This document shows positions 34,516 to 59,105 of a stretch of DNA of 64,000 nucleotides, piece after piece (position 1 is the first letter of the stretch; each line of letters opens with the position of its first letter). Under the pieces are notes generated by a model that was not told where the DNA came from, searched no databases, and saw nothing but the letters and a program-made list of their open reading frames with translations. The stretch comes from Anthoceros angustus (taxonomy: Eukaryota > Plantae > Anthocerotophyta). The translations under genes and the position numbers were made by a program. Where the stretch lies: assembly GCA_010909165.1 (NCBI GenBank), contig MU008173.1:124001-188000 (forward strand), given 5' to 3'.

Positions 34516-34550
34516 TCCAAAGCTTGGGAGAAGAAGAGCAAAATATGGAG

Positions 34551-38183: not shown

Positions 38184-39471
38184 TGATCAAACAGCTCAGG
38201 AGATGCAAGCAAAGCAGTCTGTCACAGCCCACGAGCGTGCCAGGGACACATCTGGAGACCGACAAATGACACCTGCAAGAGCAACACAACCCTCTACCAC
38301 GAGAAGTGAAAGGTTGCGGCATACCTCGGAGGATCAGCAAGGCTAAGCTTCCAGAGAAGCTCATCCTCGACAACTGATCAGCAATCCGAGAAGCAAGGAT
38401 CCTTGCTTCCCAGGGTACCTAAACACGAATCTGGTGCCAAAGCCACACCAAGCCCGCCAGGCAGTTCGGCTGGCACAAGGCCAGATGAGATGAGATCTGG
38501 ATGCCAAAGCAGATTACCTTCTTTGCAGTTCAGGATCAGAGGCCATATCCTGCCTTACCACCGAGGGAGTTACTGCACAGTGCAGCACCACACATGGCCA
38601 CAGGTGAAGGCCCAGTTTTGTCTGCAGTACAGAAGAACATTCTAGCCTCTCTGGAAAAGCGGGACTTGAAGTTGCCGTTCAGGTTGAATGCCAATTTCAA
38701 TCACCCTTTGCTCTAACTCTGGAGTTACAACATTATCCTCATACCTGGTAGCGTTGTCACCTGTTGCTGAGACAGAAATAGGACCTCCTGAAGCGCTACC
38801 AAAAGAGCAACATCTGGATCAACAGATTGGACTTCTTCAACTACTGCATAAGCAGCTCCCATTTAAACAAATTTATTAGCAACTTGCACTTCATTACCAC
38901 AACTCCGCTGAGCTGCTGTGACCACATCAATTCCTGTGCTGGAAAGTTTTTTTCACTGCAAATACTTGAATCAGTCCAACTCCAGCTCCAATACCATTCT
39001 CTTGGGTGCAGGTGCAGCTTCTTTCACTACTGTAGCTGAAGCAACCTCACAAGATACAGGACCCCTGTCTGCCGCCTGAGTCATAGAACACAGAAGATCG
39101 CCAAAACTTCCAGCCAAAGACGAACACAAGTGGAGAGATAGCGCCACAGTCGCCCCACACTTTTAGCATTTCCTCCCATTGTTTAGTGGCGTTGGCGTAT
39201 GTGCAACTGACCGTCTGACGTTGGCATAAGGAAGCACAGGTCATGAAAATGAAGCGTGGAATGAGTCGTTTCCTAACATTAGCAGAAGGCACAAACAAGT
39301 GACCTAGCGGAGTCCTGGGGAAGCAAGATGCAGATCGGAGTGGGATTGGTGAAGGTGTCGCGGTGCGTAGCACGCTCCTTGCTCGTTGAGATCGAGGGAA
39401 AGCAGAACCGAGATGGCAGGGATTTGAGTCACAAGTTCTGCTGATTCGTCTTGGGAGCTTGCCAAGCTGCG

Positions 39472-41336
39472 ATGGCGAAGGGGAGCGAGGTGAGAGTGGT
39501 GGTGGGGATCGATTTCGGCACAACATACTCTGGCTTCGCATTTGCGCACAAGGACGAGCCTGACAAGATCTGCGCATTCTACGAGTGGCCGGGGCAGGAG
39601 GGCAAATCATATTGCAAGACGCAGACCGGGCTGTTCTACGTGAAGAAGGGCACGGCTTGAGCAGCAAGCCAGTGTACGAGGTGACACACTGGGATGGCCG
39701 GCGCAGGCCCGACAGCTCAAAGAGGTCCCGGCCGCTGGATCGGAAGCTGGGGTTCACCTCACCAGGTTCAAGCTGCATCTGGCGCCGCAGAAGGCTCGGG
39801 ATGCCGCTCTTTCCAGGATGCTGTCAGGGCTGGAAATGGGATGGACAGGAGGTAAGGAAGCACGGCATGGCCCAGGCAGAAGAGGCGGACACGAAGACGG
39901 ATGGGAAAGATGTCGGCGTCAAGCTTCCCGAGGGCTTGCCAGTGGTGAGAGCGACGGCCGACTTCATCAAGGAGATCTCCACCTTCGCTCTCGAGCATGT
40001 GAAGGAGACATGGGGCGGCCACATCACGGCCAGGGATGTGCAATGGTGCCTGACCGTCCCCGCCATCTGGGACGATTCCGCCAAGCAGATCATGCGCAAG
40101 TGCGCGGAGATGGCCGGGCTGGTGGCAGGCCCTAGCTGCCCGCCTCACCTGGTCCAGACCGCCAGCCCGCATCCCGTGCGGATCGTGTTGGAATCCGAGG
40201 CGGCATCAGCGTACTGCGCCAAGACCAGATCAAAGCAGCTGAACCTGAAGCGCGGAGACGAGTTCATGGTGGCGGACATCGGGGGAGGCACCACGGACAT
40301 CGTGGTCCACACCATGGCCAACGACGGCGAGACGGAGATGAAGTTGAAGGAAGCAGTGCAGAGCTCGGGTGATCTCTGCGGGGGTGCGCATGTGGACGCC
40401 AACTTCTTCCACATGCTGCGGGCCAGGATCGGCTGCTTCGACGAAGTGGTGAGCCAGAACCCTGCCGCCATGACCGCGCTGCAGAGGCGCTGGTCCGACA
40501 TGAAAACCTCCTTCGATGGCTCTGAGGACTGGGGTCCTCAGAGCCTGGACGTCCCAAAGGCCATGAAGAAGGCGTGGAAATCCTACAACAGGAAATTTGG
40601 CGGGAGCGAGGACGTGGACTTGAACTACGCCGAGATCGAGCTCACAGTGTCGGACATGAAGCAGATCTTCGACCCTGTGGTGGACAGGATCATAGAGCTC
40701 ATTCGGGAGGCCATCACACCGCGCTTGAAGCAGCTGCTGCTGGTAGGCGGTTTCTCTGCCTCTCCTTACCTGGTGGACAGAGTGAAGGCAGCACTCGCGG
40801 GCAGGCTGGGAGACAAGATCGTGATGCCGCCAGATCCCGGTAGCGCCGTGTGCCAAGGAGCTGTCCTCTTCGGTTTTTCCCCGACCTGGTCGTCTCCAGA
40901 GTGGCCCGGAAAACCTACGGCCTTGAGGTGATGTGCCTTCGATTCGAAGCTCGATCCTCCCAGCTACCAGACTTGGAATCATAACGGTTGGCGATGCAAG
41001 AACAGGTTCGGCGTCTTCGTGCGCAGGGGACAGCACGTCGGCGTGGATGAAAGCTTCTCGGTTTCCGCAAGCCCCGGTATGGCAGACCAGACCAGCATAC
41101 CATTGCGCATCTTCAGCACAGACGCCGTGGAGGTGCGCTACACCACCGATCTCGGCGTGGTTCTGGAAGGCGAGTTCGAAATGGACGTCTCACACGATCC
41201 TGGCAAGATCGGTGTGAACCGTTGCATCACAACGTCAATGTTTTTCGGCAGATCGTGCATCCGCGTTCACTGTAAACGAGACAACTTTGGTGACACTGAG
41301 GAGACGGTCGAAATGGCCTCCACCCTGGAATTGTGA
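39472..41336 (+). pseudogene. HSPA12-like copy 7, full length with frameshifts
   Basis: MAKGSEVRVVVGIDFGTTYSG...EMASTLEL*; the lesions inspected are -1 events in G/C runs. Confidence 0.85.
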
Positions 41337-42179
41337 CTCATCATCAGGCCTTGCCTTGCTTCCGGTTTCCATCATCGCATTCGACAAGCTTTAGATGACA
41401 CCAGCTTTAGATGACAAGCTCTGTCATGAAATCGGCACGACCCTCCTGTCATGTCACATCCAGAGCTTCTGATTCGAGTGCAACTGGACGATCCGATCGA
41501 AATTGAGAAATGCTTCCAAGCCCTAGATGAAGCGGGTGACCTGGGAAAGCCGGGTGAGTTTCCTTCCAGTTATGCACATATCAGAGTGAGAAGAAGAAAG
41601 AAGGAATTGTTTTTCTGGACGCTGTTTGTGTTTGTACACTGTTGATTCCTGCCCTGTACTCACATGGAGAGAGCAAGTGTACTGGCCGAGTGTGTCCTCC
41701 TGACAGTCTTCAGCCTCCAGGTGCAGCTTCTTTCACAACTGTAGCTGAAGCAACCTCACAAGATACAGGACCCTGTCTGCCGCCTGAGTCATAGAACATA
41801 GAAGATCGCCAAAACTTCCAGCCAAAGACGAACACAAGTGGAGAGATAGCGCCACAGTCGCCCCACACTTTTAGCATTTCCTCCCATTGTTTAGTGGCGT
41901 TGGCGTATGTGCAACTGACCGTCTGACGTTGGCATAAGGAAGCACAGGTCATGAAAATGAAGCGTGGAATGAGTCGTTTCCTAACATTAGCAGAAGGCAC
42001 AAACAAGTCACCTAGCGGAGTCCTGGGGAAGCAAGATGCAGATCGGAGTGGGATTGGTGAAGGTGTCGCGGTGCGTAGCACGCTCCTTGCTCGTTGAGAT
42101 CGAGGGAAAGAAGAACCGAGATGGCAGGGATTTGAGTCACCAGTTCTGCTGATTCGTCTTGGGAGCTTGCTAAGCTGCG

Positions 42180-44047
42180 ATGGCGAAGGGAGCGAGGTGA
42201 GAGTGGTGGTGGGGATCGATTTCGGCACAACATACTCTGGCTTCGCATTTGCGCACAAGGACGAGCCTGACAAGATCTGCGCATTCTACGAGTGGCCGGG
42301 GCAGGAGGGCAAATCATATTGCAAGACGCAGACCGGGCTGTTCTACGTGAAGAAGGGCACGGCTTGAGCAGCAAGCCAGTGTACGAGGTGACACACTGGG
42401 ATGGCCGGCGCAGGCCCGACAGCTCAAAGAGGTCCCGGCCGCTGGATCGGAAGCTGGGGTTCACCTCACCAGGTTCAAGCTGCATCTGGCGCCGCAGAAG
42501 GCTCGGGATGCCGCTCTTTCCAGGATGCTGTCAGGGCTGGAAATGGGATGGACAGGAGGTAAGGGCACGGCATGGCCCAGGCAGAAGAGGCGGACACGAA
42601 GACGGATGGGCAAGATGTCGGCGTCAAGCTTCCTGAGGGCTTGCCAGTGGTGAGAGCGACGGCCGACTTCATCAAGGAGATCTCCACCTTCGCTCTCGAG
42701 CATTTGAAGGAGACATGGGGCGGCCACATCACGGCCAGGGATGTGCGATGGTGCCTGACCGTCCCCGCCATCTGGGACGATTCCGCTGGCAGATCATGCG
42801 CAAGTGCGCGGAGATGGCCGGGCTGGTGGCAGGCCCTAGCTGCCCGCCTCACCTGGTCCAGACCGCCAGCCCGCATCCCGTGCGGATCGTGTTGAGTCGG
42901 AGGCGGCATCAGCGTACTGCGCCAAGACCAGATCAAAGCAGCTGAACCTGAAGCGTGGAGACGAGTTCATGGTGGCGGACATCGGGGAGGAACCACGGAC
43001 ATTGTGGTCCACATCATGGCCAACAATGGCGAGAAGGAGCTGAAGCTGAAGGAAGCGGTGCAGAGCTCGGGTGATCTCTGCGGGGGCGCGCATGTGGACG
43101 CCAACTTCTTCCACTTGCTGCGGGCCAGGATCGGCTGCTTCGACGAAGTGGTGAGCCAGAACCCTGCTGCCATGACCTCGCTGCACAGGCGCTGGTCCGA
43201 CATGAAAACCTCCTTCGATGGCTCTGAGGACTGGGGTACTCAGAGCCTGGACGTCCCAAAGGCCATGAAGAAGGCGTGGAAATCCTACAACAGGAAATTT
43301 GGCGGAAGCGAGGACGTGGACCTGAACTACGCTGAGATCGAGCTCACAGTGTCGGATATGAAGCAAATCTTCGACCCCGTGGTGGACAGGATCATAGAGC
43401 TCATTCGGGAGGCCATAACCCCGCGCCTGAAGCAGCTGCTGCTGGTAGGCGGTTTCTCCGCCTCTCCTTACCTGCGGGACAGAGTGAAGGCAGCATTGGC
43501 AGGCAGGCTAGGAGACAAAGCGATCGTGATGCCGCCAGATCCCGGTAGCGCCGTGTGCCAAGGAGCTGTCCTCTTCGGTTTTTCCCCCGACCTGGTCACC
43601 TCCAGAGTGTCCCGCAAAACCTACGGCCTGGAGGTGATGCGTGCCTTCGATGACGAACTGGATCCTTCCAGCCATCGGGCATGGGGTGATTCCTTGGGTT
43701 GGCGATGCATGCACAGGTTCAGCATCTTCGTGCGCAAGGGACAGCACGTCGGCGTGGATGAAAGCTTCTCGGTTTCCGGAAGCCCCAGTTTGGCAGACCA
43801 GACCAGCATACCATTGCGCATCTTCAGCACAGACGCCGTGGAGGTGCGCTACACCACCGATCCCGGTGTGGTTCTGGAAGGCGAGTTCGAAATGGACGTC
43901 TCACACGATCCTGGCAAGCTCGGTGTGAAGCGTCGCATCACAACGTCAATGTTTTTCGGCAGATCGTGCATCCGCGTTCACTCTAAACGAGACAACTTTG
44001 GTGACACTGAGGAGACGGTCGAAATGGCCTCCACCCTGGAATTGTGA
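42180..44047 (+). pseudogene. HSPA12-like copy 8, full length with frameshifts
   Basis: Duplicate of copy 7; ORF 43004-44047 is uninterrupted. Confidence 0.85.
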
Positions 44048-44477: not shown

Positions 44478-46367
44478 ATGGAGCCGACGGTGGTTGTCGG
44501 GGTCGATTTTGGCACCACGTTCTCGGGCTTCGCTTACGCGCACAGGCAGAACGCTGAGAAGAAGTACTCCTTCTACGAATGGCCGGGCCAGGACGGGAAG
44601 CCTTACTGTAAGACCCAGACCAGTCTGTACTACGAGAAGCATGAGGCCTCCGACGCACCGGGGAGCCTGCCGCGGTTCGAGCTCACGCATTGGGGATGGC
44701 CGGCTCAGGCTCAGCACCTCAAGAGCGCGCAGTCGGATGGAGGTCCCAAGGGCGTCTACATCAGCCGCTTCAAGCTCCTTCTGGCGCGTGGCACGCTGGA
44801 TGATGCTGCCTCAGAGCCCCAGGCTGCTGCTGCTGACGAAGTTGCTCAGTCGTTTGCCCAGCTCGAACTCGTCGCCAGCAGGAGCGAGGCAGGAGGATCG
44901 GAAGTGGAGGAAGGCAAGCAGCAAGCGATCGTGAAATCGCTCTTTCATCCTCCGGACGAAGGACTGAGTGTCATGAGAACCACTACCGATTTTCTGAGCC
45001 GATTGTCCGGCTTCGTGGTGGATCATCTGCAGAAGAGGCTCGGCTCGCGCCTGAGCTCGCGAGACGTGCAATGGTGCCTCACGGTGCCCGCCATCTGGGA
45101 GGACTCGGCCAAGCAGGCGATGCGGAGGTGCGCTCAGATGGCGGGAATGGTGATAGGCCCGCATTGCCCCGCGCATCTGGCCAGGATGGCGAGCCCGCAT
45201 GCGCTGCAGATCGTGCTGGAGTCCGAGGCAGCTTCTCTTTACTGCGCGAGCAACTCTGCTCAGTGGAATCTGCAAGAAGGAGACCAGTTCTTGGTGGCAG
45301 ACATCGGGGGAGGGACCACGGACATCGTGGTGCACACCATAGCCAGCGGCCCCGGGGACTCCCAGCTCAAGCTCAAGGAGACGACGGAGAGCTCCGGTGA
45401 CCTCTGCGGTGGCACCAATGTGGACATTAACTTCCTCAGCGCCCTTTGGGGACAGATCGGGTGCCTACACGAGATGGTGCGCACATCTCCGGCCACCATC
45501 GCCAAGCTGCTGAGAAGATGGTCGGACATCAAGGCCACTTACGACGGATCTGCCATGACCTGGGGCCCGGAGTACCTGGAAATCCCCAAGATTCTGGCTC
45601 AAGCATGGCGTTCTCACGACCAGCAGCACGGCAAGACGGCGGACGACTACGACGACATCCAGATCACAAGTGCCGACATGATGCAGATCTTCGACCCCGT
45701 GGTGGACAGAATCATCCAGCTGATCCAAGCTCGTGTGAGTCAGACTCCAGAGATCAAGCTTCTGCTCCTGGTCGGCGGCTTCTCCGCATCGCCTTACCTC
45801 AGGCAGAGAGTGAAGGCCGCATTCCAGACGCAACTAGGGGGCGCAATCGTGATCCCACCCGACCCCGGTAGCGCTGTCTGCCAGGGCGCTGTCCTGTTCG
45901 GCCTTTCCCCTGCCGCTGTCACCTCTAGGGTTTCCCGCAAAACCTACGGGATCGAGCAGGTGCAGCCGTTCGACCCGGCGATCGATCCCGACGGCTACCG
46001 GAGAGTAACGGACCGTGGAGAGTGGTGCGCTCATCGCTTCAGCGCCTATGTCCGGAAGGGCCAACAGGTTGCCGTGGATGATCGAGTGAAGCGCGTCAGC
46101 CAGCCCGTCCACCATGGCCAGCAGGAGATGAAGTTTCGCATTTTCAGCTCGGATTCCGCGGAGGTGCGCCACATCACTGAGCCCGGGGTGAAATTGGAGA
46201 GCGAATTCGCGCTGGACATCTCGGACGATCCCGGCAACCTGGATCTGGATCGGGAGGTGGAGGTGTCCATGTTCTTCGGGTTGTCTTGCATCCGCGTGGT
46301 TGCTCGTCGCCTCAATTTCGGACACACAAATGAAGTGACGGAAATGCAAAGCACTGTAGACTTCTAG
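44478..46367 (+). CDS. HSPA12-like atypical Hsp70, copy 9, intact (~629 aa)
   Basis: MEPTVVVGVDFGTTFSG, RFKLLL, WCLTVPAIW, LESEAAS, DIGGGTTDI, LVGGFSASPYL, SRKTYG. An upstream exon at ~44166-44268 (GTGAGT donor) is possible. Confidence 0.92.
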   Translation: MEPTVVVGVDFGTTFSGFAYAHRQNAEKKYSFYEWPGQDGKPYCKTQTSLYYEKHEASDAPGSLPRFELTHWGWPAQAQHLKSAQSDGGPKGVYISRFKLLLARGTLDDAASEPQAAAADEVAQSFAQLELVASRSEAGGSEVEEGKQQAIVKSLFHPPDEGLSVMRTTTDFLSRLSGFVVDHLQKRLGSRLSSRDVQWCLTVPAIWEDSAKQAMRRCAQMAGMVIGPHCPAHLARMASPHALQIVLESEAASLYCASNSAQWNLQEGDQFLVADIGGGTTDIVVHTIASGPGDSQLKLKETTESSGDLCGGTNVDINFLSALWGQIGCLHEMVRTSPATIAKLLRRWSDIKATYDGSAMTWGPEYLEIPKILAQAWRSHDQQHGKTADDYDDIQITSADMMQIFDPVVDRIIQLIQARVSQTPEIKLLLLVGGFSASPYLRQRVKAAFQTQLGGAIVIPPDPGSAVCQGAVLFGLSPAAVTSRVSRKTYGIEQVQPFDPAIDPDGYRRVTDRGEWCAHRFSAYVRKGQQVAVDDRVKRVSQPVHHGQQEMKFRIFSSDSAEVRHITEPGVKLESEFALDISDDPGNLDLDREVEVSMFFGLSCIRVVARRLNFGHTNEVTEMQSTVDF

Positions 46368-46887
46368 AACTGTAACTTTTCAAAGACTTTGCAGTTGCAT
46401 CAAAATGCTCCGCAAAAGGGTTTGATTCAGAAGAAGCCCCGTAGGGCTGAAGCAGCCGCGCACAGTGTGAGAGACGGGGGCGGGATTTCATTCAGGCCGC
46501 CCCGTAAATGGCCGGGTGACACCACGTCTTCGTACAGATTCGTCCATCGCACGCTTGACTGTGAAGTTCGAGTCCTGAGGAGTGAGGACCCTTCAAGGAG
46601 AAGGGAGGAGTAGCAACTGGCAAGGATGAAAATAGATAACCATCTCTGGTTGGGTGCCGCTTTATCGCTACATGCGGGCCCCTTTTGCTCCGGATCTGAA
46701 CAGAGACGGCGTCGCACTGTGATCAAGTGGTCGCTGCAGTCACTGCATTCTGCGGCTTTGACCTGACTTTGCTCCGATGCGGTTCAGCGAGTTCTTCGCA
46801 TCTGTGGAAGGTTGGCCACTTCGGGTGGCCAGGTCAGCGTAAGCCACGGTTTGTTGTTCCCGATTCTGAGGAATCATCAGGAGGAGG

Positions 46888-49755
46888 ATGGACATATTCA
46901 CGGTCATTTCCATCGCCGAAGTACTGGTGGGGATTGTATCCAAGGTGAAGGAATGCTACGAGAAGAGGAAGGAAAATCGCGAGGAGGCAAAGCAGATGAG
47001 CTCCTTCCTGGACAACTTGCTGACCAGTGTCCGCATGCTTGAAGATGAGAAATTTTCGCGCATCGACAACCCGGCAGCAGCTTCTGCTATTGGTACATCT
47101 AGGGCTTGCTTCAAATCCCAGCCCCCAACCCTAGATGTGTTGCAGGCTGGGATGTGGACGGATTTGTGAATGCAGGCCTGGGGTATTTTGTTGCTCATAT
47201 GATCCTGAAGCTTCTTGAACTGCTTGATTGCTCCTTGCAGCGGCATTGGGCCGTGACCTCCAAGAAGCTCAGGAGGGAGCTGCCAATCTCCTTTCACAAC
47301 TTAGCCGCCGGAAGTCGATGTGGAAGCCAAAACGCATACAGTTTGCTCTGCAGTCGCTGCAGCAACGCGTTAGAGATTCATTCCAGACGAATTTACTCAT
47401 GGCGTCACTTCATGTATGACTTTCTCTGCTCGCTTCTTTCTGCGCGCACCCTGAGCCAGAAGAGGTCAATTATTCTGTTACAGTACGCTCTAGGAATGTT
47501 GTGCCAGCTGGTGATAATTTCTGCTTGGAGTTTGCAGATGAGCGTGACCAGCGACCGGAAACTGCAAGCAGTTCTCGACGAAAAGAGTGAAAGGGAGAAG
47601 ACCGCTCTGATAGACAAAGTGGAGAAACTGGAGATGGAGAATCACATGTACCAGGAGCTGTTGCATTGGCTGCGGAGAGATCAGCCCGCTTGGCGATCAG
47701 CTGAAGTAAGATTTCGTGCTCAAGGCTGCACCTAGGATTCTCGTGAGTTTATGCACAAGTTCCAGATGTTGCACTGTCTTGTAACCTCATATACTAGTAC
47801 TGACTTTCTTTTGCTCTCTGTTGTCATCATGAACCTAGCCTGAGCCAGAGCACACCACTCCGAGGCACCCTGCTGATCATGATGTTGCAAGGCTAGATGA
47901 AGTCTCTTGTACGTTTAAAACGAATTCCTGCATCATGTTTCTCCTCAAACTTGTGTGCTGATCAAAAGGAGTGAATTCATTCATTGTGATGACACATTAT
48001 CCTTCTGTCGGAAGTGGCAGCGGGCAGGTCCAACCGAGCAAGAAGAACAACCAGTGACCCGATGCTAGCTTCCTTAGGAGAGATTCTTGGGGACTGGCAC
48101 ATGGGAGGGAACATTGCAGGATTTGGCAGCCTGGAGGAGCAATCCGAAGAGGCAGACCTGGATGATATAGAAGAGTACTCGGATGAGGAAGAGCAGCCGA
48201 GGCGTCTGAAAATGTCCAGTCTCAAGATCGTGCGGCTTTCCAACGCCTCCCTGACAGCGGAGTACCCCGAACAGGCCTGCTTCACACCCGGTGCCCTGGC
48301 TGTCCAAGCCAACCGGGCTTGTACCGAGCGTATCCCTTTCTATTACTTCGAGGTGGAGGTGATCAGGCAGGGCAGTGACATCGCCATGGGCTTCACACGA
48401 GTTTCCAGCTTCAAGAACAACAGGCTGCCAGGGTTGTATCCAGATTCCTACGGCTACCATGGCGATGGCGGGATTTTCATGGCATCAGGTCACTCGAGAG
48501 TTCTGGGCTTCGTGTCTGGGGACAGAGTTGGTGCAGGGATCCATTTCGGCATGCACCAAGTCTTCTTCACCAAGAACGGGGAGCTTGTGGCATCCAATCC
48601 CGTGGACACTGAGGGGGAGGGCCTCGTCCCCACAATCGGCCTTCGAAGACCGGGTGCCAAAGTGACTGTCAACCTGGGCCGCTCCAGATTCAAGCGAGAA
48701 CCCCTCCCCACACGCCTGGATCCCCGTGGGCTTGAGGGGAGCGCAGTCTCCATCTTGCCAGACTACTTGACTGTCAGGTACTGGCTCCATCTTCCTCTTT
48801 CGACAAGACGACTACTGTCCCACAAATTCTCACCTTCTCCATGTTTCTGTGAAGGCACGAAGGACTCAACTCCAACGGCATGGTCTCCGTGCAGGCAGAC
48901 AAACCTGCAGCATATCGGAGGCACTTCTTCTACTTCGAGATCCTGGTGGAGGACACTGGGACGAAAGGCCGAATTGTGGTCGGCTTCACGGGCTCCAGAA
49001 ACGGGGCGTCTGAGAAAATCTGGGAGACCAACGCTTGTGGATACCACGGCATCAGCGGCAAGATTTTCTCCAACAAAGAGGAGCTTCCGGGCGCCCGAGA
49101 GACCTTCACCGCAGACGACCATGTTGGGGCCGGAATACACTACCGCACCAACCAGCTCTTCTTCGTGAAGAACGGGCAACTGGTGCGAACGCTGCCCAAC
49201 CCGCTCTCAGGGCCCGTGTTCCCCACAATCGGGCTGCAGTCCAGCCAGGAGAGGGTGAAGGTCATCTTCGACCAGGCTGCATTCAGCGCAGAGAAGATTC
49301 CCCGGCGGCTGGACTTCCCGGCGCGCTTCGGCGGCACTCCTGTGGCGGTTCTGGCCAACAGACCCGCGCCATTCCGCGGGTCCGGCTACTACTTCGAGCT
49401 GTGCGTAACGGATTCCGTTTGCGCCATCGGGTTCGCAGATCGGGAGCGCTTCCGGGAAAACGAGCTGCCCGGGACGTACCAGCACTCTTGCGGCTACGAT
49501 GGCGCCACCGGGATGCTCTTCACCGGCTCCAAGCCAGGGCTGAAATTCGGTCCCACTGCAAAGCCAGGCGAAGTCCTGGGCGCTGGCTTGCTCTATGACT
49601 CCTACGAGCTCTACTTCACCAAGAACAGGAAGGTGTTCGGCTGGCATGCCTGTAATCTGCGATCCTCTTGCGCCCTTTACCCCACAGTCGGCATGCTCAC
49701 CGGTCGTCATGTCGAGGTCAACTTTCTTGCTCGCCTTCCCTTTCCGTCAACTTGA
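46888..49755 (+). CDS. Spliced gene: N-terminal four-helix bundle (MLKL-NTD/RPW8/Cbl-N-like) + coiled coil + acidic linker + 3 tandem SPRY domains
   Basis: Phase-consistent exons 46888-47092, 47241-47413, 47538-47705, ~48030-48777 and 48855-49755; the junction between 47705 and ~48030 is uncertain. Three YYFE(V/I/L)...G(Y)HG/GYDG...GAG...FFTKNG-type SPRY repeats. Confidence 0.8.
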
Positions 49756-50938
49756 GAATGGCTTCCAGTAATCAATGTGGTAACTGCCACTCCATCTCCC
49801 CAGTCCCTGTAGTCTTCCTTATTATTGTCACCCACACGCATTGAAGAGCCCCCAAAATTGAGCCTGTCAAGTAACTTCCACAATTTGCTGCCAGGCGAGA
49901 ACTTGGACATGGCAAGCATGAACCTTTAGGAACTCCCTGGTGAAGGACATGCAAGCTTTGATTGGCGCTGGGATGGGAACCTCGGGATGGGATAGGTTGG
50001 GGTGCTTATCCCAATAATGGAGCTTCAGAAATGAGGACCTCTGTAAAAATCTCTTCCACGGATTGCTCAGAACTGTTTCTTATCTACCAAGCGGGCTCTC
50101 AAGGGAGCTCCATCCCACTTCTGAACCGCTTCATATAAAGATACCCCAGTTCGTCAGCAAACTTCAGATACCTTCAGGCCGCGCTTCTTGCAAGGCTGGC
50201 TTCGTGGCCCATCCGATTGCAAAAAACGGGGCGGAATATTATGGATTTCAGTAGCAAGGTTTGACATGGTCTCGTCCACGTCACCAAGGGATGGAGTGTG
50301 TTACAATCTGCCCACGTGGTGGCGCAAGTGGCTATCGTGCTTTGACGTTGGAAAGCAGAAGAGGAGATGGGCAGAGTTGAGGCTTCCGGCATCATCACTG
50401 TCTGCACCTGGGCTTAGAGCTCGCTTCCCAGCTCTCTCTACTTCACTTACAAGTAAGAGGTCGTGGTGGCGAGTGATCGTCCTTGTGCAGGAATTGCGCG
50501 TCCGGGATGATGACTTGATGCAGAGCGTGGCTGGAGCGGAGCATCTGGCTTGTTCCAGCGCCGGGTGTTCCAGTGGTGTTCAAGGAAACGACATGAGCAA
50601 GTGAGCAGGACTTCATGTTCAGCGCATAGGTCGAGTGTGGATGAGTTTCATCGATTGGGTGAGTTTTTCGTGTTCCTGCTTCTGGTTGTGGACGGCCACT
50701 AATCTGCACAAGCTGAAGAACCCTAGCTGCCATTCAATGTCAGATCTGGGACGGCCTTGTGTATTTGGCATCCCCGATGGCGAACCATGGTGGTCGCAAC
50801 ACCCATCCATCGCCGCACCCGTTTCATCCCACAAGTGTAGGTGCCCTCGTTAAATTTCTGGCCGGCATTCTTGTAAGCTGTTGTTCCTAGCTGCAGTGAG
50901 CTCGTGAGTGTGGCATGTTCAGAGTCAAGTGCTGAAGT

Positions 50939-52570
50939 TTGTGTTGTGTCCAACAGCCTCAGAGGATGCCGCAGGGTGTAGCCGGTATGCAGCAGTCACG
51001 AGCGGCTAACTCGTATTTCGTGACTGAATCAAAAGCACTGGAGGACCTGAGGGGTTGTGTGCAGATCACCATAGCTCAACTGAACAGCGGGGTCGAGGGA
51101 ATGGACAAATTTTCAAAAGATCTGGACGCACTCCTGCTCGCAGCTCGTGACTTGTTGCAGGTGAAGTCTAACCACGTTGAGGATGAGCCTGATCCGAAGC
51201 AAACCAGAGTTCCAAGAGGTCTTTTCTATGGACAGGGAATAGGGGGTTCGAATTCTGGTGTCAGTGATGATCAGGGCCACATACAAGAGAAGGGAGCTCC
51301 AAAAAGTGTAGAAGCTTGGGGGCATGAATCCAGTCAGCAAGTGTTCATGATCGGCCAGGAAGCGAAGCGCTTGGATATGAGGGATGACAGGTTCCTAGGA
51401 GGACAGCTATCTCATCACGATCTGCAGGAAGGTGGTCAGCTTCTTGAACAAAACTCGCAGATGGGTGTTGACCCTTTGGCGGTACTGGAGGATAGGAAGG
51501 AAAAGCTAGTAGCATCCCTCACACAGATAAAACAGGGGTGGGATTGCCTTCGTGACGTTCACAACACCGTGTACGGGCGGTTTACGGTTGCAGATGATCA
51601 ACTCCAACGTGTCGTTTCAGCGAACAAGCATATTGTTCAGGGGAGGAATTACGCACACGAAATCGACCGAATTGAAGACTCTTGGCGGCGAAAGCATGAA
51701 ACTGTCAAAAAGGAACTGGCCGATCTTAAGGCCAACATGGATGAGCAGGTCCAGAGTCTGAAAGCGAAATTACGGCAGGCTGAGCAGGAAAATCGCAAAG
51801 CACGAGGTGGCTCGCATACGGACAACGGAGCCCTCCCTCCCGGGTTGGATCAGGCTGCGACGGCTGTGAAGAACAGACTGGTGAATTTTGCCAAAACCGT
51901 GAGCGACCATGGGTTTGCTAACCGCCTCGAGCTTCCCCGTGATGAGCGGCATAGCTCTCAAGTCATTGATTCCATGGCATTCCCTACTAAGGAACGCCGT
52001 ATGAAGTACCGCGCAGCGTATGTGATCTCTATTCTGATGTTCAGGGGCTTTGAGATCGACGGCTTCGACTCCACGAAAGGTTACTTTCTTCCCAGCTTGG
52101 ATCCTGACGATAGCGCCTCCGCTTCCTTCGAGGAGTTTCAGACCCTGAAACATCAGTCGTCGGATGCCGCCTTCCTACAGCAAGTGGAGGAAATAGTGAT
52201 ATCCAACGCAGCGGCCGATGGGGACCGATTCCAACAGTTTGTCTGGCAAAAATTTCGTGACGTGGTCCCTGACAAGCTGTTGGAGGAGGCGTGTGGAATC
52301 CCTGATATCGTGAAGAAGTTTGTACATCTTGCTATTGCAGTGTGGCTATTGCAGAGGTTGGCTCTTTCATTTCACCCCAACGCTAAGATCTTCAGAGTGC
52401 CGTGTGGCGCGGAATTCGACGATCGGTATATGGTTAAGATTGCGGATAACGAGCCTGACACGGCCCCGCCCACAGTTGGGTTCATGGTTGTTCCAGGATT
52501 TCGGCTGGGGAAGATCATCGTCAAGAGTGAGGTGTACCCTCAACGTGGTGACTGCAGCGAAGAAGAGTAG
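50939..52570 (+). CDS. GIL1/IRKI-like coiled-coil protein (main exon; true start may lie in an upstream exon)
   Basis: Central coiled coil, then FRGFEIDGF...AVWLLQRLALSFHPNAKIFRV...VGFMVVPGFRLGKIIVKSEVY, resembling the GIL1/IRKI C-terminal domain. Confidence 0.82.
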   Translation: MCCVQQPQRMPQGVAGMQQSRAANSYFVTESKALEDLRGCVQITIAQLNSGVEGMDKFSKDLDALLLAARDLLQVKSNHVEDEPDPKQTRVPRGLFYGQGIGGSNSGVSDDQGHIQEKGAPKSVEAWGHESSQQVFMIGQEAKRLDMRDDRFLGGQLSHHDLQEGGQLLEQNSQMGVDPLAVLEDRKEKLVASLTQIKQGWDCLRDVHNTVYGRFTVADDQLQRVVSANKHIVQGRNYAHEIDRIEDSWRRKHETVKKELADLKANMDEQVQSLKAKLRQAEQENRKARGGSHTDNGALPPGLDQAATAVKNRLVNFAKTVSDHGFANRLELPRDERHSSQVIDSMAFPTKERRMKYRAAYVISILMFRGFEIDGFDSTKGYFLPSLDPDDSASASFEEFQTLKHQSSDAAFLQQVEEIVISNAAADGDRFQQFVWQKFRDVVPDKLLEEACGIPDIVKKFVHLAIAVWLLQRLALSFHPNAKIFRVPCGAEFDDRYMVKIADNEPDTAPPTVGFMVVPGFRLGKIIVKSEVYPQRGDCSEEE

Positions 52571-52990
52571 GACTACTTTTGTGGTTCTCGAGGTGCTTAG
52601 CCTTGACGAGGACTCATGCTTTGATTCAATGCCCTGCACGTCACCTTGCGAGCAGATGAACTTGTGTTACATATGTGGTGGCCCTCCAATGCTGCCAAGG
52701 ATTTGTGATATTAGGTATGTGAGGAGAATTCATGGAATGAACTCTTTGACGGGAGTCAGTGAAAACACACACACTGGGTCCTCCCTTCAAGGGGTGACAT
52801 CCAGACATTCTTCCCAACTTCCCAGTTAAGCGTCCTTGGGACGGATCAGTGCTCGGATTGTTACCAACTTCATGCCTTAAGCTTCGTCTCCAGATCAAAA
52901 TCCCAGTGCCGGACTTCGGTTCACCAAACAAACACACACACAGTGGAAATGCAACTATCTGAATCGACAATTGCAAACCCCGAGTTGCAC

Positions 52991-53150
52991 TAGGGATTTT
53001 TGCGAAAGAGCGGATCACGGCAGGTGAAGAGCTGTTTTACGACTACGACTATGCTCCGGAATCGTTCGCACGAAAAGCCCAACATCCTCGCAAACTGAAG
53101 AAGCCAGCCAAGAGGCTGTCTCTGTCGGATCCTTGGGCCTTGTTTTTCGA
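52991..53150 (+). pseudogene. E(z) SET C-terminal fragment
   Basis: GIFAKERITAGEELFYDYDYAPES, then a deletion joining to FARKAQHPRKLKKP. Confidence 0.8.
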
Positions 53151-54181: not shown

Positions 54182-56211
54182 ATGGCGGCCGGCTGGAAGC
54201 AGAAGTTGAGCAAACGGGCGGGGGCGTCGGTGTCGTCGACGAGCAGCGAGACCGGGGAGGCGAAAATCGTGGTGGGTTTGGATTTCGGGACCACATTCTC
54301 GGGCTTCGCGTTCGCGCACAGGGACGAGCCGGACAAGGTGTTCTGCCACTACGAGTGGCCGGGGCAGGAGAAGAGCTACTGCAAGACGCAGACGAGCCTG
54401 TACTACGTGCGGGAGGGGCCCGGGCCCGAGGCCAAGTACAGGGCCACGCACTGGGGCTGGGGGGCGCAGCAGGCGCACTTGAAGCAGCTCAAGGGTCAGG
54501 GCGGGCGAGCCGGGCTCTGGGAGCAGAGCGCCAGCCTCTTCCTCTTCAAATTCAAGCTCAATCTGGCGCCGGAGGGGTGGAGGACGGGGCGGCAAGGGCA
54601 GGACGGGGCGGACGCGGCGCAGCTGGATGCGCTGGCCAGGCTGCCGGCGGGGATCACCACCGTAGACAGCATCACCGAATACCTGGGGAAGCTCTCGGGC
54701 TTCGTGATCGAGCATCTCAAGGACAAGTACGGGCCGCACATCACGTCCCGGGAAGTGCAGTGGTGTCTCACGGTGCCCGCGATATGGGAGGATTCGGCCA
54801 AGCAGACGATGCGCAGATGCGCCCAGATGGCGGGCATGGCCACCGGGCCTTTCTGCCCGGCGCAGTGGGCGGGGAGGGCCAGCCCATTCCCGCTGCTGAC
54901 CGTGCTGGAGTCGGAGGCGGCGTCCGTGTACTGCGCGCGCAGATCCAACCAGTTCGCTCTCGGGAAGGGGGACCAGTTCCTGGTGGCGGACGTGGGGGGC
55001 GGGACCACCGACATCGTGGTGCACACCAAGCAGAACGACAGCTCGTCCGATCTGCGGCTGCGGGAGGTGTCGCAGAGCTCGGGGGACCTCTGCGGGGGCA
55101 CGCATGTGGACCAGGGCTTTCTGGGATTTCTGGGCCGCAGGATTCCGTGCTTCCTGGATGAGGTGCACGGTGCCCGCCACTCTCACCAAGGTGCTGAAAC
55201 GGTGGCAGGAGTTGAGGTGTCGCAGAGCTCGGGGACCTCTGCGGGGGCACGCATGTGGACCAGGGCTTTCTGGGATTTCTGGGCCGCAGGATTCCGTGCT
55301 TCCTGGATGAGGTGCGCACGGTGCCCGCCACTCTCACCAAGGTGCTGAAACGGTGGCAGGAGTTGAAGGTGTCGTTCGATGGCGATGACCAGTGGGGGCC
55401 GGAGGACTTGGAGATCCCTCCCAATCTGTCCAGGGCCTGGAAGGTGTACGATGCCAGGATGGGATACTGCTCTGCAAACTACGACGAGATAGAGATCACG
55501 GCGTGCGATATGCGGGCCATCTTCGATCCTGTGGTGGATGGGATCATTGCGTTGATCGGGCAGCGGCTGACTCCGCAGGTGAAGATGATGCTGCTGGTGG
55601 GTGGCTTCTCTTCCTCGCCGTATCTCAAGCTCAGAGTGAAGGGTGCCTTTGCCAGGCAGCTGGGTGATCGGATAGTGACCCCGCCGGATCCCGGCAGCGC
55701 TGTGTGCCAAGGGGCCGTCTTCTTCGGCTTCGCGCCGGAGGTGGTCACCTCCAGGGTTAGCTGCAAAACGTACGGGATCCAGCAGATGCGCAGGTTCCGG
55801 CCTGGGGATCCCCCTGCTTATAAGACCATGTCGCAGGGGACGGCCTACTGCATCAACACCTTCACGCCCTATGTGCGGAAAGGGCAGGAAGTCCCCATCC
55901 AGCACTGCGTCAAGTACAGAGGAGGCCCTTCTGTGTGTGGCCTCAAGACCTTGAACATCAACATTTATAGCTCGGATAAGCAGGAGGTGCGCTACACCAC
56001 CGACGCGGGAGTGAAGCTGGAGGCTACTTTCAGCATGGACATATCTCACGATCCTAAGAACCTGGATCTGAACAGGGAAGTGGAGCTGTCCATGTACTTT
56101 GGATTGTCGTGTATAGAGGTTAAGGCGAGGCGCCTCAATTTTGGGGATCGGAATGAGGTGGTTAGCATGCACGATGTCATCGGCTTGACACTCGAGACAC
56201 CCGTCGTTTGA
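54182..56211 (+). pseudogene. HSPA12-like copy 10 (inverted twin of copy 2) with ~150-bp internal duplication and a frameshift
   Basis: ORFs 54020-55348 and 55255-56211; repeat starts at 55064 and 55214. Confidence 0.88.
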
Positions 56212-56681: not shown

Positions 56682-58588
56682 TTAGGAGGCAGCAATTTGA
56701 GAGTACACTTCACTTCTTATGACGACTTTCCCTACACGGAAGCCTGGAACAACCATGAAGGCGACTTTGGGAAGGAAAGGATGTTCATCTTCATCCACAA
56801 TGTTAGCCATGTAGGAAGGATTGAAGTCTGCTCCACTATCCACTCGGAAGATCCTTGCACTGGGCAGAAAGGAGAGAGCCAACCTTTGCAACAGCCACAA
56901 TGCGGTAGCAAGAGCCACGAACCTTCTGTAGTAGGGGTGGTGCGTTTGTTGACATGTCGGTACAAGCTGCCTAGGAGTAATGCTGAAAAACTTGCTACGA
57001 GCAAATTGTACCATCTTACTGCTGGAGTTGGCCGGGTTCAGGTCCACCACCGTTTTGTTGGACTTGAGCTGCTGGAATTCCTCGAAGAAGGCTTCGCGAG
57101 GCCTGTCCAGATCCAAAGGCCCGGGCCCGCAAAACCCATCAATCTCGAACCCTTGGAACATGGCAGTCGATATGACATAAGCCGCAAGGTACTTATGGTG
57201 GGTAGACCTTGCAAGTCTCGTCCTGCTGATCACTCCGGAATCTCCATAGGGCAACGCCGCTTTCTCCATCACCGTGCCATACTCCTTGGCAAACAGTAGC
57301 AGCTTGTCTTTCACGGTCCTCACATGATCATCCAGCAGCACAGGTGTTGCTTCACCGTCCGTGTACGCTCCGGACCTCGACTTTCTTGCGTTATCCTGTT
57401 CCAGCAACCTCGTCAGCTTCTGCACCTGCTGCTGCCCAGCCCTAACCTCCTCCTTGAGCTTTAAAATTTCGTTTTCCCCGTTCCTGCTCCTCAACGCCTC
57501 CTGGTAGGTTCCCTCCTGCACATCCCGCGTCGGCGATGCGGTCCTCGTCGGAGACCCGTACTGATCATGGCGAGAGATATCATGCACAACCTGCCCTCTC
57601 CGATCGAAGGAGTCCCTCCTCATACCATCAGGCGTTTGCAATCGGTGATCGAAAGACTGCACTCGGCCAGTCCGACTTTGGAGCTCTTGCCTCAACTCCG
57701 TCACACTGGCGTTCGAGTGACGATTCTGCTGTGCCTGCTTCACCTCCGGTTGAGCCAGGAGTACCTGCAGCTGCATGTGATGCTCCATAACCTCCGAAAC
57801 AAACGCTGCAGTACGGTTGCTCCAGTGTTTCAGATGAGAAAGCTCATCATCTGTACCTTCCCTCTGCCTGGTGTGGTGAGCGCTGTCATCCAAGGAGCCT
57901 GTACGCCGATGGTGGTTTTGCTGAAGCTGGGCTACTCGGCTCCGAGGATGAGCATACCCCTGGGCAATCGGTCCACTGAAAGGATGAGAGTACATGCTGT
58001 TCTTCACATCCTGCCACCCTCCTCCCAACCCCTCCCGTTCTGCCGTCGGACCCCGCACAATCATGCCATCAGCTGTCCTGGCCGGTAGCTCCACCAGACC
58101 TCTACATTTGAACTCGTGATCCTGCCTAGCCTGGGAGGCCAACTCTGCCATTTTTTTGCATCCAGCTTCAAGATTGTCCAGCGCAGATAGATACAGATTA
58201 GATACCTGGCCGAGCCTCGGGGCTATACCCTCGTACACTTTTACATGTATCCGGGCCGGCGTCTGTGGGGCCGACTGCTGCACCAAAGCTGGTAAGGGTT
58301 GGGTCGCAATGAACTGAGCTGAGGTAGAGGAAGTGTAAGGCTCGCTTGATGACGAGGATGTCAGAAACGACTACTTGTTACAAAACAGAAAGCACACTGG
58401 TCAGTCAGCATTCCAGAAACTTTTCTTCTTCCCTAGCTCAGCATAGCATTGCCGGAGCTGATCAGATCAGCCTTCCAACTCCAGGACAGTAGTACCTCGT
58501 TTTCTCTGATGCCATAGCCAGACTCCAGATGTCCCTGGTTCTTGGGCTTCTTCTCCTTTCCGAACAGCGCTGTTTTCAACTTCCTCAT
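56682..58588 (-). CDS. GIL1/IRKI-like coiled-coil protein, two exons (58496-58588 and 56682-58370), ~593 aa
   Basis: Exon 1 MRKLKTALFGKEKKPK...ENE|GT joins in frame at an AG acceptor. C-terminus FQGFEIDGF...LWLLQRLALSFLPSARIFRV...VVPGFRVGKVVIRSEVY. Confidence 0.82.
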
Positions 58589-59105
58589 AGCTCCTCTGTC
58601 CGCGGTTTCCTGGAACCGGAAGCGCAGAACCACCCTCTCCAACACCTGCAAGCGAAATTCGGACCCCTTCCTGACTCCACAACAACCTGTTACATCAAAT
58701 TCGGGCCGAGGCTGCAACCCTACATGACTTTAGCAGGCAGACATGCCGGAAACAAGAAACAGCTGGAGGATTTCTCATTCGGGAGAAGGGGAAGAGGAAA
58801 TTTACGAGGTGGTTGAGCAAGCCGTGAAGTGAGGTTGGGGATTGGAGAGCCAGTGCTGGAGTCTCCCGCAAGAATCGCGTGCGGCGGGTGGAGGCAATTG
58901 GTGCGAGCAGGAGCGCATTGCCTTATCCTGGGCGCTAGTGCACAGCCACCTGCTGTAGCACTTTGACATGGTCGTGAATTGTTTAAACAAAAAGCCGCCC
59001 AGCCCGCATCCCGCACCGCGGTGGCACAACGCAATTCGGACAGCACAAAACTGCTGTCCCTTCGCGGAAAGGGTCAGAGGTGGGTTGCCTCCCATCGCCG
59101 CTGCC

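What the first reader, a model, noticed from the sequence alone, without database searches (positions are those of the whole stretch)
44478..52570. Candidate new module: HSPA12-like ATPase + 4HB-3xSPRY protein + GIL1/IRKI-like coiled-coil protein
Seen: three apparently intact, co-oriented genes in ~8 kb. The same three families recur together elsewhere: an HSPA12 / GIL1-like / HSPA12 block at 54-61 kb and its mirror, and GIL1-like, 4HB and HSPA12 remnants at 61.1-62.6 kb. Known: four-helix bundles of the MLKL/RPW8 type execute membrane-disrupting cell death, and plant immune genes evolve in birth-and-death clusters. Inference: a non-NLR surveillance module with SPRY as sensor, 4HB as executor, the atypical Hsp70 as nucleotide switch, guardee or decoy, and the GIL1-like protein as scaffold. 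Repeated linkage could also be passive co-duplication.
Basis: partly seen in the sequence, partly recalled or inferred. Interest (0 to 1): 0.85.

Follow-up and report, generated by a model that had tools for sequence, protein, structure and literature searches.

The report
Orphan Hsp70 genes paired with GrpE-like partner
The three genes are real, but only two belong together across plants: an orphan HSPA12-type Hsp70 ATPase and a neighbour whose tail folds like GrpE, the bacterial Hsp70 nucleotide-exchange factor, which gives a testable candidate partner for a chaperone class of unknown function.

Summary
An intact HSPA12-like ORF, a spliced and transcribed helical-N-terminus + 3xSPRY gene (759 aa) and a spliced and transcribed GIL1/IRKI-like gene (574 aa) lie co-oriented in 8 kb. 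They sit inside an unstable array of 11 HSPA12-like copies (3 intact) and 4 GIL1-like copies (2 intact).

The three-part immune-module reading is not supported. The SPRY gene occurs once, plus one decayed exon, and is absent from every related locus I could fetch.

The HSPA12-like / GIL1-like adjacency recurs outside this genome: in a moss (Ceratodon), in two liverworts (Calypogeia, Riccia), on an unnamed eukaryotic contig, and two locus tags apart in a fern (Adiantum). About one third of the sampled GIL1-like loci show it.

The GIL1/IRKI C-terminal region folds like GrpE. All 12 top Foldseek PDB hits are GrpE, and weak Pfam GrpE matches fall in the same register.

Best reading: a conserved Hsp70-type ATPase with a GrpE-like cofactor, and the SPRY gene as a local insertion. 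Biochemistry is untested.

The scan had flagged this pairing before, 60 kb upstream (s1-278007, s1-278055).

The parts
44478..46367 (+). Gene 1: intact, intronless HSPA12-like Hsp70-superfamily ATPase (629 aa)
   Evidence: Stop-free ORF. Pfam HSP70 2e-11. 39-52% identical to bryophyte, lycophyte and fern proteins that NCBI names 'heat shock 70 kDa protein 12A-like'. The DxGTT, ExEAA, DxGGGT and VGG columns are invariant in alignment A2. A profile of A2 hits the DnaK nucleotide-binding domain at 7.8e-15.
46437..50134 (+). Gene 2 transcript: helical N-terminus + acidic linker + 3 SPRY domains. Exons 46437-47092, 47241-47413, 47538-47705, 47839-47908, 48015-48777, 48855-50134. CDS 46888-49755, 759 aa.
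   Evidence: Spliced transcript contig in run X1, all introns GT..AG. A single 759-aa ORF.
46888..47705 (+). Gene 2 exons 1-3: about 180 aa helical N-terminal region, the claimed four-helix bundle
   Evidence: No Pfam match on the exon pieces. Exon 1 gives only a weak language-model lead to fungal HeLo/SesA-type N-terminal domains, score 0.81. The fold was not tested.
48341..49749 (+). Three SPRY domains (about 48341-48682, 48928-49275, 49312-49749)
   Evidence: Pfam SPRY 1.1e-12 for exon 5 and 1e-25 with two stretches for exon 6. Internal tblastn similarity between the three.
50238..53049 (+). Gene 3 transcript: GIL1/IRKI-like protein. Exons 50238-50658, 50744-50836, 50957 to about 53049. CDS 50641-52570, 574 aa.
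   Evidence: Spliced transcript contig. ORF. GIL1_IRKI_C 2.9e-11. The N-terminal 240 aa or so have no detectable relatives.
52217..52567 (+). GrpE-like module of gene 3: three helices plus a small beta domain (GIL1_IRKI_C at 52388-52537)
   Evidence: AF2 model pLDDT 88.2. The top 12 Foldseek PDB hits are all GrpE/GrpEL1, probability 0.63-0.99, and the next hit has probability 0.06. The top 3 of 48,161 chains by VIA-align are GrpE. hhalign places it on E. coli GrpE 144-192.
56685..58370 (-). Second intact GIL1-like gene, 39% identical to gene 3, lying head-to-head with the HSPA12-like gene at 58959-60908
   Evidence: 562-codon stop-free stretch. GIL1_IRKI_C 6.6e-12. blastp against gene 3.
58959..60908 (+). 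Intact HSPA12-like gene
   Evidence: 650-codon stop-free stretch. 48% identical to gene 1. Pfam HSP70, weak.
54257..56181 (+). HSPA12-like pseudogene, with the reading frame split at a tandem duplication of about 160 bp (55064-55222 / 55214-55374)
20884..26520 (-). Inverted copy (about 90% identity) of 53.0-58.5 kb. It holds an intact HSPA12-like gene (23285-25327, minus strand) and a rearranged GIL1-like pseudogene (21519-22796).
   Evidence: Self-blastn, ORF check, tblastn of the 56-kb GIL1-like protein.
61098..62740 (.). Decayed remnants: GIL1-like C-terminus (61098-61663, +), gene-2 exon-2 fragment (62094-62380, -), HSPA12-like pieces (61624-61998 and 62376-62740, -)
30294..44047 (.). Six further HSPA12-like copies, all with frame breaks or truncations, including a 2.7-kb tandem pair (39009-41717 / 41718-44433, 94.9% identity)

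Best explanation
Shown: the locus is part of a fast-turning-over array of HSPA12-type Hsp70-superfamily ATPase genes, interspersed with GIL1/IRKI_C genes. HSPA12-like/GIL1-like adjacency is not peculiar to this locus. It is seen in mosses, liverworts, an unnamed eukaryote and, two genes apart, a fern. The conserved C-terminal part of the GIL1-like protein has the GrpE architecture: a long helix, then a helical hairpin and a small beta domain. Its sequence motifs fall in register with the GrpE beta domain. The ATPase keeps all its nucleotide-binding motifs. Inferred: the GIL1-like protein is a dimeric, GrpE-like cofactor that docks its beta head on the nucleotide-binding domain of the neighbouring HSPA12-like ATPase. 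It would act as a nucleotide-exchange factor or another regulator of the ATPase cycle. This makes the pair a eukaryotic counterpart of the bacterial grpE-dnaK neighbourhood. The helical + 3xSPRY gene between them is most likely a lineage-specific insertion into the array, possibly a relative of the helical/U-box/TPR/SPRY proteins noted elsewhere in this genome. At most it is a local client or adaptor, not a core part of the unit.
For: Gene models and transcripts. Array map: 11 HSPA12-like and 4 GIL1-like copies. Cross-species adjacency: in Ceratodon purpureus locus L004 the order is HSP70 / GIL1_IRKI_C / HSP70, with the last two head-to-head as at 56.7-60.9 kb here. In Calypogeia fissa L007 an HSPA12-like gene lies 5.6 kb downstream. 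In Riccia fluitans L091 an HSPA12-like C-terminal part lies 3.8 kb downstream, with a second GIL1 fragment. In the unnamed eukaryotic contig L006 an HSPA12-like fragment lies 6 kb upstream. In Adiantum nelumboides the locus tags are 002426 (GIL1-like) and 002428 (HSPA12-like) on one 369-kb contig. The linked genes fall in several lineage-specific clades, separate from the DUF641-bearing vascular-plant clade. GrpE likeness: the AF2 models have pLDDT 89.4 and 88.2. Foldseek ranks 1-12 are all GrpE/GrpEL1, with best E 1.5e-3, probability 0.99 and 24% identity, then a drop to probability 0.06. The Foldseek-independent search puts GrpE at ranks 1-3 of 48,161 chains. Pfam GrpE hits 5 of 38 family members. 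In all three cases I inspected, the GIL1_IRKI_C region maps to GrpE profile positions 117-157 of 165, with best E 3.2e-4. hhalign gives the same register, P 0.03. Precedent within the family: Arabidopsis COST1, a DUF641 protein, binds and stimulates an NTPase, RHD3, with its C-terminal domain modelled next to the GTPase domain (PMC13189119). HSPA12 function and cofactors are stated to be unknown (PMC13580251).
Against: No binding or exchange activity was or could be tested, and no multimer model was available. The structural scores are modest: VIA Z 5.5-6.3, Foldseek E only 1e-3, TM 0.37-0.48. Gene 3 itself gives no Pfam GrpE hit, and no relative reaches the GrpE gathering score (best 20.9 against 25.8 bits). 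Linkage is partial. Of roughly 10 GIL1-like-centred loci with usable flanks, 3 have an HSPA12-like sequence within 10 kb, one more has it two genes away, and 6 have none. Some linked partners are fragments (L006, L091). Angiosperm GIL1/IRKI/COST1 proteins work in genomes where no HSPA12-like protein appeared among the 120 listed hits, so the family is not tied to HSPA12 in general. The g2 transcript contig starts 70 nt after the gene 1 stop without running into gene 1. This hints that gene 1 was not expressed at a similar level in that sample.
Confidence: 0.5

Rival explanations
1. Passive co-duplication only. A GIL1-like gene and the SPRY gene happened to land in an HSPA12-like array and were copied along with it. 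No two of the three proteins work together.
For: Inside the window, much of the recurrence is plainly segmental duplication: the 90% inverted copy, the 94.9% tandem pair, and the remnants at 75-88% identity. Most copies are pseudogenes. Six of about ten GIL1-like loci elsewhere have no HSPA12-like neighbour.
Against: Adjacency recurs in a moss, two liverworts, an unnamed eukaryote and nearly so in a fern, in different GIL1-like clades. My rough estimate of the chance rate is below 1% per locus; this is an inference from copy numbers, not a measured figure. The neighbour of an Hsp70-type ATPase having the fold of the Hsp70 exchange factor is an unlikely coincidence.
Confidence: 0.25
2. The GIL1-like protein is a GrpE-like or coiled-coil cofactor of something else, such as canonical Hsp70s or a dynamin-like GTPase as for COST1-RHD3. 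The adjacency to HSPA12-like genes would then reflect shared regulation, for example a bidirectional stress promoter, rather than physical partnership.
For: COST1 acts on RHD3 (PMC13189119). The head-to-head arrangement in three loci (window 58.4/59.0 kb, L004, L006) fits shared promoters. Seed plants keep the family although no seed-plant HSPA12-like protein is among the 120 listed hits.
Against: The GrpE fold points to an Hsp70-type nucleotide-binding domain as the target. The linked genes lack the DUF641 domain that marks the characterised members.
Confidence: 0.15
3. One reading: a three-part non-NLR surveillance and cell-death module. SPRY is the sensor, the helical N-terminus is a membrane-disrupting executor, HSPA12-like is a switch or guardee, and GIL1-like is a scaffold.
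For: The three genes are packed with about 70-100 nt between transcript ends. Genes 2 and 3 are both expressed in one sample. A decayed second HSPA12-to-helical-domain junction exists at 62.1-62.7 kb. Exon 1 weakly resembles HeLo/SesA-type domains. The array shows birth-and-death dynamics.
Against: No SPRY or helical-domain match lies in any of the loci fetched from other organisms. Two of the three HSPA12/GIL1 units in this window lack it. There is no Pfam support for the four-helix bundle. Close relatives of the SPRY region were not found in the searchable length range. No immune evidence of any kind was obtained.
Confidence: 0.08

Closest known systems
Bacterial and organellar GrpE with DnaK/mtHsp70 (grpE-dnaK neighbourhood; complexes 1DKG, 4ANI, 8GB3, 9BLS)
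   Same: An Hsp70-type ATPase is encoded next to a protein with a long helix, a helical hairpin and a small C-terminal beta domain. GrpE chains are the only clear structural matches. Motif-level register with the GrpE beta domain.
   Different: This is nuclear, spliced and probably cytosolic. The partner ATPase is HSPA12-type, not DnaK-type. An extra helical bundle of about 150 residues sits between the long helix and the GrpE-like module. Sequence similarity is below the Pfam GrpE threshold. Exchange activity is untested.
GIL1 / IRKI / COST1 (DUF641) family of land plants
   Same: Carries the GIL1_IRKI_C domain. COST1 is a coiled-coil dimer whose C-terminal domain sits next to an NTPase domain and stimulates it (PMC13189119).
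   Different: Gene 3 and the linked relatives lack a detectable DUF641 domain and form clades apart from the DUF641 clade. I found no paper linking the family to GrpE or to Hsp70s.
Animal HSPA12A/B and the bivalve HSPA12 expansions
   Same: Atypical Hsp70-superfamily ATPase with a conserved nucleotide-binding domain. Large lineage-specific tandem expansions. Function and cofactors unknown (PMC13580251).
   Different: A plant lineage, only about 30% identical to animal members. Here there is a recurrent specific gene neighbour.
MLKL / RPW8 / HeLo four-helix-bundle executors fused to sensor domains
   Same: Gene 2 has an N-terminal helical region of about 180 residues followed by repeated protein-binding domains. 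Exon 1 gives a weak HeLo/SesA lead.
   Different: No family match, no fold test, no kinase, NB-ARC or U-box. The SPRY triple is an unusual C-terminal partner.

Membership tests
Hsp70 superfamily, HSPA12 subfamily (gene 1) | Hsp70-type nucleotide-binding domain with phosphate-1 (DxGTT), catalytic ExEAA, phosphate-2 (DxGGGT) and adenosine (VGG) motifs | tested here: met
   Pfam HSP70 2e-11. The columns are invariant in A2, including all three intact window copies. The A2 profile hits the DnaK and BiP nucleotide-binding domains at 1e-13 to 1e-15.
Hsp70 superfamily, HSPA12 subfamily (gene 1) | Closest named relatives are HSPA12-type rather than canonical Hsp70/Hsp110 | tested here: met
   Full-length 39% match to a Selaginella protein that NCBI names 'heat shock 70 kDa protein 12A-like'. 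Gene 1 alone gives no direct phmmer hit to any PDB Hsp70.
Hsp70 superfamily, HSPA12 subfamily (gene 1) | No alpha-helical lid and no C-terminal EEVD | tested here: inconclusive
   The C-terminus does not end in EEVD. The fold of the C-terminal half was not modelled.
GIL1/IRKI (DUF641) family (gene 3) | GIL1_IRKI_C domain (PF24994) | tested here: met
   2.9e-11, 43.6 bits against a cut-off of 27. All 38 aligned relatives have it.
GIL1/IRKI (DUF641) family (gene 3) | N-terminal DUF641 domain (PF04859) | tested here: not met
   No hit for gene 3. Only 7 of 38 relatives have it.
GrpE (PF01025) | Helical hairpin plus C-terminal beta domain, preceded by a long helix | tested here: met
   Model elements. 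GrpE chains are Foldseek ranks 1-12 and VIA-wide ranks 1-3.
GrpE (PF01025) | Sequence match above the family's curated threshold | tested here: not met
   Gene 3 has no hit. The best relative scores 20.9 bits (E 3.2e-4) against a cut-off of 25.8. The three inspected hits share one register.
GrpE (PF01025) | Homodimer that accelerates nucleotide release from an Hsp70 partner | not testable with these tools
   Needs a multimer model or biochemistry.
MLKL/RPW8/HeLo-type four-helix bundle (gene 2 N-terminus) | Family-level sequence match | tested here: not met
   No Pfam family on exons 1-3 scanned separately. The pieces are short, so this is a weak test.
MLKL/RPW8/HeLo-type four-helix bundle (gene 2 N-terminus) | Four-helix-bundle fold | not tested
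   The spliced protein has no reference usable by the folding tool. There is only a language-model lead to HeLo/SesA, score 0.81.
SPRY domain proteins (gene 2) | SPRY domains (PF00622) | tested here: met
   Three domains, 1.1e-12 and 1e-25. The atlas neighbours are SPRY families.
Birth-and-death gene cluster | Tandem and inverted duplicates of mixed age, with many pseudogenes | tested here: met
   Duplicates at 65-95% identity. 3 of 11 HSPA12-like and 2 of 4 GIL1-like copies are intact.
Plant immune module | Induction by pathogens, cell-death activity, physical interaction of the parts | not testable with these tools
   Only one transcript data set could be laid. It shows that genes 2 and 3 are expressed.

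The most novel reading that the evidence does not exclude
The whole plant GIL1/IRKI/COST1 family descends from, or converged on, GrpE and acts as nucleotide-cycle cofactors. In non-seed plants a DUF641-less branch would be the dedicated exchange factor of the orphan HSPA12-type Hsp70s. At this locus the pair would control the helical + 3xSPRY protein between them as a chaperone-gated, HeLo/MLKL-like effector. That would make a three-part stress or surveillance unit of a kind not described before.
Probability: 0.08. Interest if true: 0.85.

Novelty: new variant of a known kind. Interest (0 to 1): 0.62.

Why it matters
HSPA12-type Hsp70s are found from animals to fungi and non-seed plants, and they expand massively in some lineages. 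A 2026 review still calls their function and partners unknown (PMC13580251). A recurrent gene neighbour with the fold of the classic Hsp70 exchange factor gives a concrete, cheap experiment: a binding assay and a nucleotide-release assay with two recombinant proteins. It also suggests a structural reading of the plant DUF641/GIL1/IRKI/COST1 family, one member of which was recently shown to stimulate an NTPase. GrpE-type factors are otherwise known in eukaryotes only in organelles (my own knowledge, not tested here). The three-gene immune module as proposed would matter more, but the evidence does not carry it.

Tried and rejected
1. The first word-indexed homologue search with gene 3 returned nothing, probably because the words came from the unconserved N-terminal half. 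The exhaustive search replaced it.
2. Contexts of the closest relatives (P0001, P0121, P0122) were short transcript-like contigs without neighbours.
3. P0124 was not on record.
4. Gene 1 alone gave no PDB sequence hit. A family profile was needed.
5. The whole 338-residue model gave only non-significant GrpE matches, E 0.17-1, buried among long-helix hits. The domain-only model resolved this.
6. A GrpE alignment built from genome contigs held only close enterobacterial sequences and was not used.
A 10-sequence alignment gave 13 mostly short, redundant loci without HSPA12-like neighbours. These count as unlinked cases.
8. The search for relatives of gene 2 was limited by the length filter. It gave two weak SPRY hits.
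9. The spliced 759-aa protein could not be passed to the folding or family tools as a whole, so the four-helix-bundle claim stays untested.
10. Two literature searches were too loosely phrased and returned nothing useful.
11. I considered a TE-cargo explanation for the block. I found nothing supporting it within 44-53 kb.

Full report
WHAT IS THERE

The window is from a plant-like eukaryote. The best protein matches are to bryophyte, lycophyte and fern sequences at 39-52% identity, and the species' own proteins are not in the protein collection.

Gene 1 is a stop-free, intronless ORF. Its homology to HSPA12-like proteins starts at the ATG at 44478 and runs to the stop at 46367. It hits Pfam HSP70 at 2e-11.

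Laying the contigs of run X1 on 46800-52700 gave two spliced transcripts.
- The first is 3110 nt with five GT..AG introns. It encodes a 759-aa protein (CDS 46888-49755) with a helical region of about 180 residues, an acidic linker and three SPRY domains.
- The second is 2607 nt with two introns. It encodes a 574-aa protein (CDS 50641-52570) with a GIL1_IRKI_C domain at its end.
- The transcripts are tightly packed. The gene 2 contig starts 70 nt after the gene 1 stop, and the gene 3 contig starts about 100 nt after the gene 2 contig ends.

THE ARRAY

tblastn with the three proteins against the window, self-blastn and a stop-codon check give the following counts.

| Family | Copies | Intact copies |
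|---|---|---|
| HSPA12-like | 11 | 3: 23285-25327 (-), 44478-46364 (+), 58959-60908 (+) |
| GIL1-like | 4 | 2: gene 3 and 56685-58370 (-), 39% identical to each other |
| Helical + SPRY | 1, plus a fragment of its exon 2 at 62094-62380 | 1 |

The two copies have decayed in opposite ways.
- At 21-25 kb the HSPA12-like gene is intact, while the GIL1-like gene carries an internal inversion and a deletion.
- At 54-58 kb the HSPA12-like gene has its frame split at a 160-bp tandem duplication, while the GIL1-like gene is intact.

Each intact GIL1-like gene has an intact HSPA12-like neighbour. The observation as written is therefore confirmed.

DOES THE LINKAGE EXIST ELSEWHERE?

An exhaustive HMMER search with gene 3 found only 182 representative relatives. 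Homology is confined to the C-terminal 300 residues or so. I looked up genomic contexts for relatives that lie on long contigs, and for one HSPA12-like homologue.

| Locus | Organism | HSPA12-like sequence near the GIL1-like gene |
|---|---|---|
| L004 | Ceratodon purpureus, chr 4 | HSP70 / GIL1_IRKI_C / HSP70; the last two head-to-head, as at 56.7-60.9 kb here |
| L007 | Calypogeia fissa | gene 5.6 kb downstream |
| L091 | Riccia fluitans | C-terminal part 3.8 kb downstream, plus a second GIL1 fragment |
| L006 | unnamed eukaryotic contig | fragment 6 kb upstream |
| (no DNA held) | Adiantum nelumboides | locus tags 002426 and 002428 on one 369-kb contig; nothing within 10 kb |
| L005, L089, L090, and three distinct metagenome loci with usable flanks | various | none |

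Leaving aside L004, which was found from the HSPA12 side, about one third of the sampled GIL1-like loci are linked. With tens of HSPA12-like genes in genomes of hundreds of megabases, I estimate the chance rate per 20-kb window at well under 1%. This is an inference, not a measured figure.

In a tree of the family, the linked genes sit in several lineage-specific clades. These are separate from the DUF641-bearing clade of vascular plants.

No locus outside this window holds any match to gene 2.

WHAT THE GIL1-LIKE PROTEIN IS

An earlier first-stage note of this scan (s1-278055) suggested that the C-terminal domain resembles the GrpE beta head. I tested this in five ways.
- **Whole C-terminal model.** An AF2 model of the C-terminal 338 residues (38-sequence alignment, pLDDT 89.4) shows an 82-residue helix, a helical bundle and a small beta domain. 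Searched whole, it gave GrpE as the top Foldseek hits, but without significance.
- **Domain-only model.** A model of the last 117 residues (53 sequences, pLDDT 88.2) gave a clean result. Foldseek ranks 1-12 in the PDB are all GrpE or GrpEL1, from five organisms. The best has E 1.5e-3, probability 0.99 and 24% identity. Rank 13 drops to probability 0.06.
- **Foldseek-independent search.** The VIA-align search of 48,161 chains puts human GrpEL1, E. coli GrpE and T. thermophilus GrpE at ranks 1-3 (Z 6.3, 5.6, 5.5). These are the only matches that cover both the helices and the beta domain.
- **Pfam.** The GrpE model matches 5 of 38 family members. In all three I inspected, the GIL1_IRKI_C region maps to GrpE profile positions 117-157 of 165 (E 3.2e-4, 0.008, 0.071). 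These three belong to the moss clade that contains the linked Ceratodon gene.
- **hhalign.** Comparison against E. coli GrpE gives the same register, residues 144-192, P 0.03.

None of these reaches family-membership level. Together they support a GrpE-like fold and probable remote homology. I found no paper that connects DUF641/GIL1 with GrpE.

WHAT THE ATPASE IS

The phosphate-1, catalytic, phosphate-2 and adenosine motif columns are invariant across 25 family members, including all three intact window copies. A profile of the family hits the DnaK and BiP nucleotide-binding domains at about 1e-14. These are therefore plausibly active ATPases. A 2026 review states that HSPA12 function is unknown and notes the large bivalve expansions (PMC13580251).

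MECHANISM

Shown:
- a conserved gene neighbourhood between an Hsp70-type ATPase and a GrpE-fold protein;
- intact nucleotide-binding motifs in the ATPase;
- expression and splicing of the GIL1-like gene.

Inferred:
- the GIL1-like protein dimerises through its long helix;
- it places its beta head on the nucleotide-binding domain of the HSPA12-like protein;
- it regulates nucleotide exchange, as GrpE does for DnaK.

The family precedent is that COST1 stimulates the GTPase RHD3 through a coiled-coil and C-terminal-domain arrangement (PMC13189119). This shows that members can act on NTPases. It also shows that the partner need not be an Hsp70, which is why I keep a rival explanation open.

THE SPRY GENE

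It is real, expressed and unusual. However, its N-terminal 'four-helix bundle' has no family match, only a weak language-model lead to HeLo/SesA-type domains. I could not fold it because the spliced protein has no reference.

It has no close relatives among proteins of 211-672 aa. Its only other trace is a decayed exon next to HSPA12-like remnants 10 kb away, which points to a local duplication.

Other notes of this scan report helical/U-box/TPR/SPRY proteins elsewhere in the genome (s1-258116, s1-305983). Gene 2 may be a U-box-less relative of these, but I did not test that.

I rate it as a lineage-specific insertion into the array. The three-part module gets about 8%.

VERDICT

- The pair is a new variant of a known kind, an Hsp70 with a GrpE-type cofactor, seen here with an orphan Hsp70 class and a plant family not previously read this way.
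- The same pairing had already been flagged by this scan 60 kb upstream (s1-278007).

Noticed in passing
window 20884-26520 versus 53065-58539: The two arms of the 90% inverted duplication have decayed in opposite ways. One arm keeps the HSPA12-like gene and lost the GIL1-like gene, through an internal inversion (21519-22288 on the minus strand against 22302-22796 on the plus strand) and loss of about 90 codons. The other arm keeps the GIL1-like gene and lost the HSPA12-like gene at a tandem duplication of about 160 bp (55064-55374).
   Followed up: partly
window 23171-25333 (+), 58983-60629 (-), 54020-55348 / 53876-55189: Very long stop-free ORFs (548-720 codons) run antisense to the GC-rich HSPA12-like genes. 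This is probably a by-product of codon bias, but the lengths are striking.
   Followed up: no
window 50266-50604: The 5' leader of the gene 3 transcript holds an upstream ORF of 112 codons, ending about 35 nt before the main ATG at 50641.
   Followed up: no
window 46367-46437 and 50134-50238: Only about 70 and 100 nt separate the end of one gene from the first transcribed base of the next. This suggests overlapping UTRs or read-through transcription along genes 1, 2 and 3. Gene 1 expression itself was not examined.
   Followed up: no
atlas result for gene 3: The predicted structures nearest to a GIL1/IRKI cluster include animal MIEAP (mitochondria-eating protein, PF16026; TM 0.47/0.67) and unnamed Mucoromycota and Ascomycota clusters. 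The family's fold may therefore not be plant-specific. Mucoromycota also have HSPA12-like proteins.
   Followed up: no
alignment A3, rows P0123, P0124, P0136, P0140 (moss clade with the linked Ceratodon gene): These members keep an F-D-x-Q-[YF]-H-E-[SP] stretch with the histidine of the classical GrpE motif, where most of the family has Y-M-E-S. They are the members that hit Pfam GrpE.
   Followed up: partly
window 16036-20432 and 5705-8015: Two further tandem duplications (2.2-kb units at 90% identity, 1.2-kb units at 89%) lie outside the HSPA12 array, in or near the region another note calls a Sola-like transposon.
   Followed up: no
window 39009-44433: A 2.7-kb tandem pair of HSPA12-like units at 94.9% identity. 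Both have frame breaks, so the duplication is younger than or similar in age to the inactivation.
   Followed up: partly
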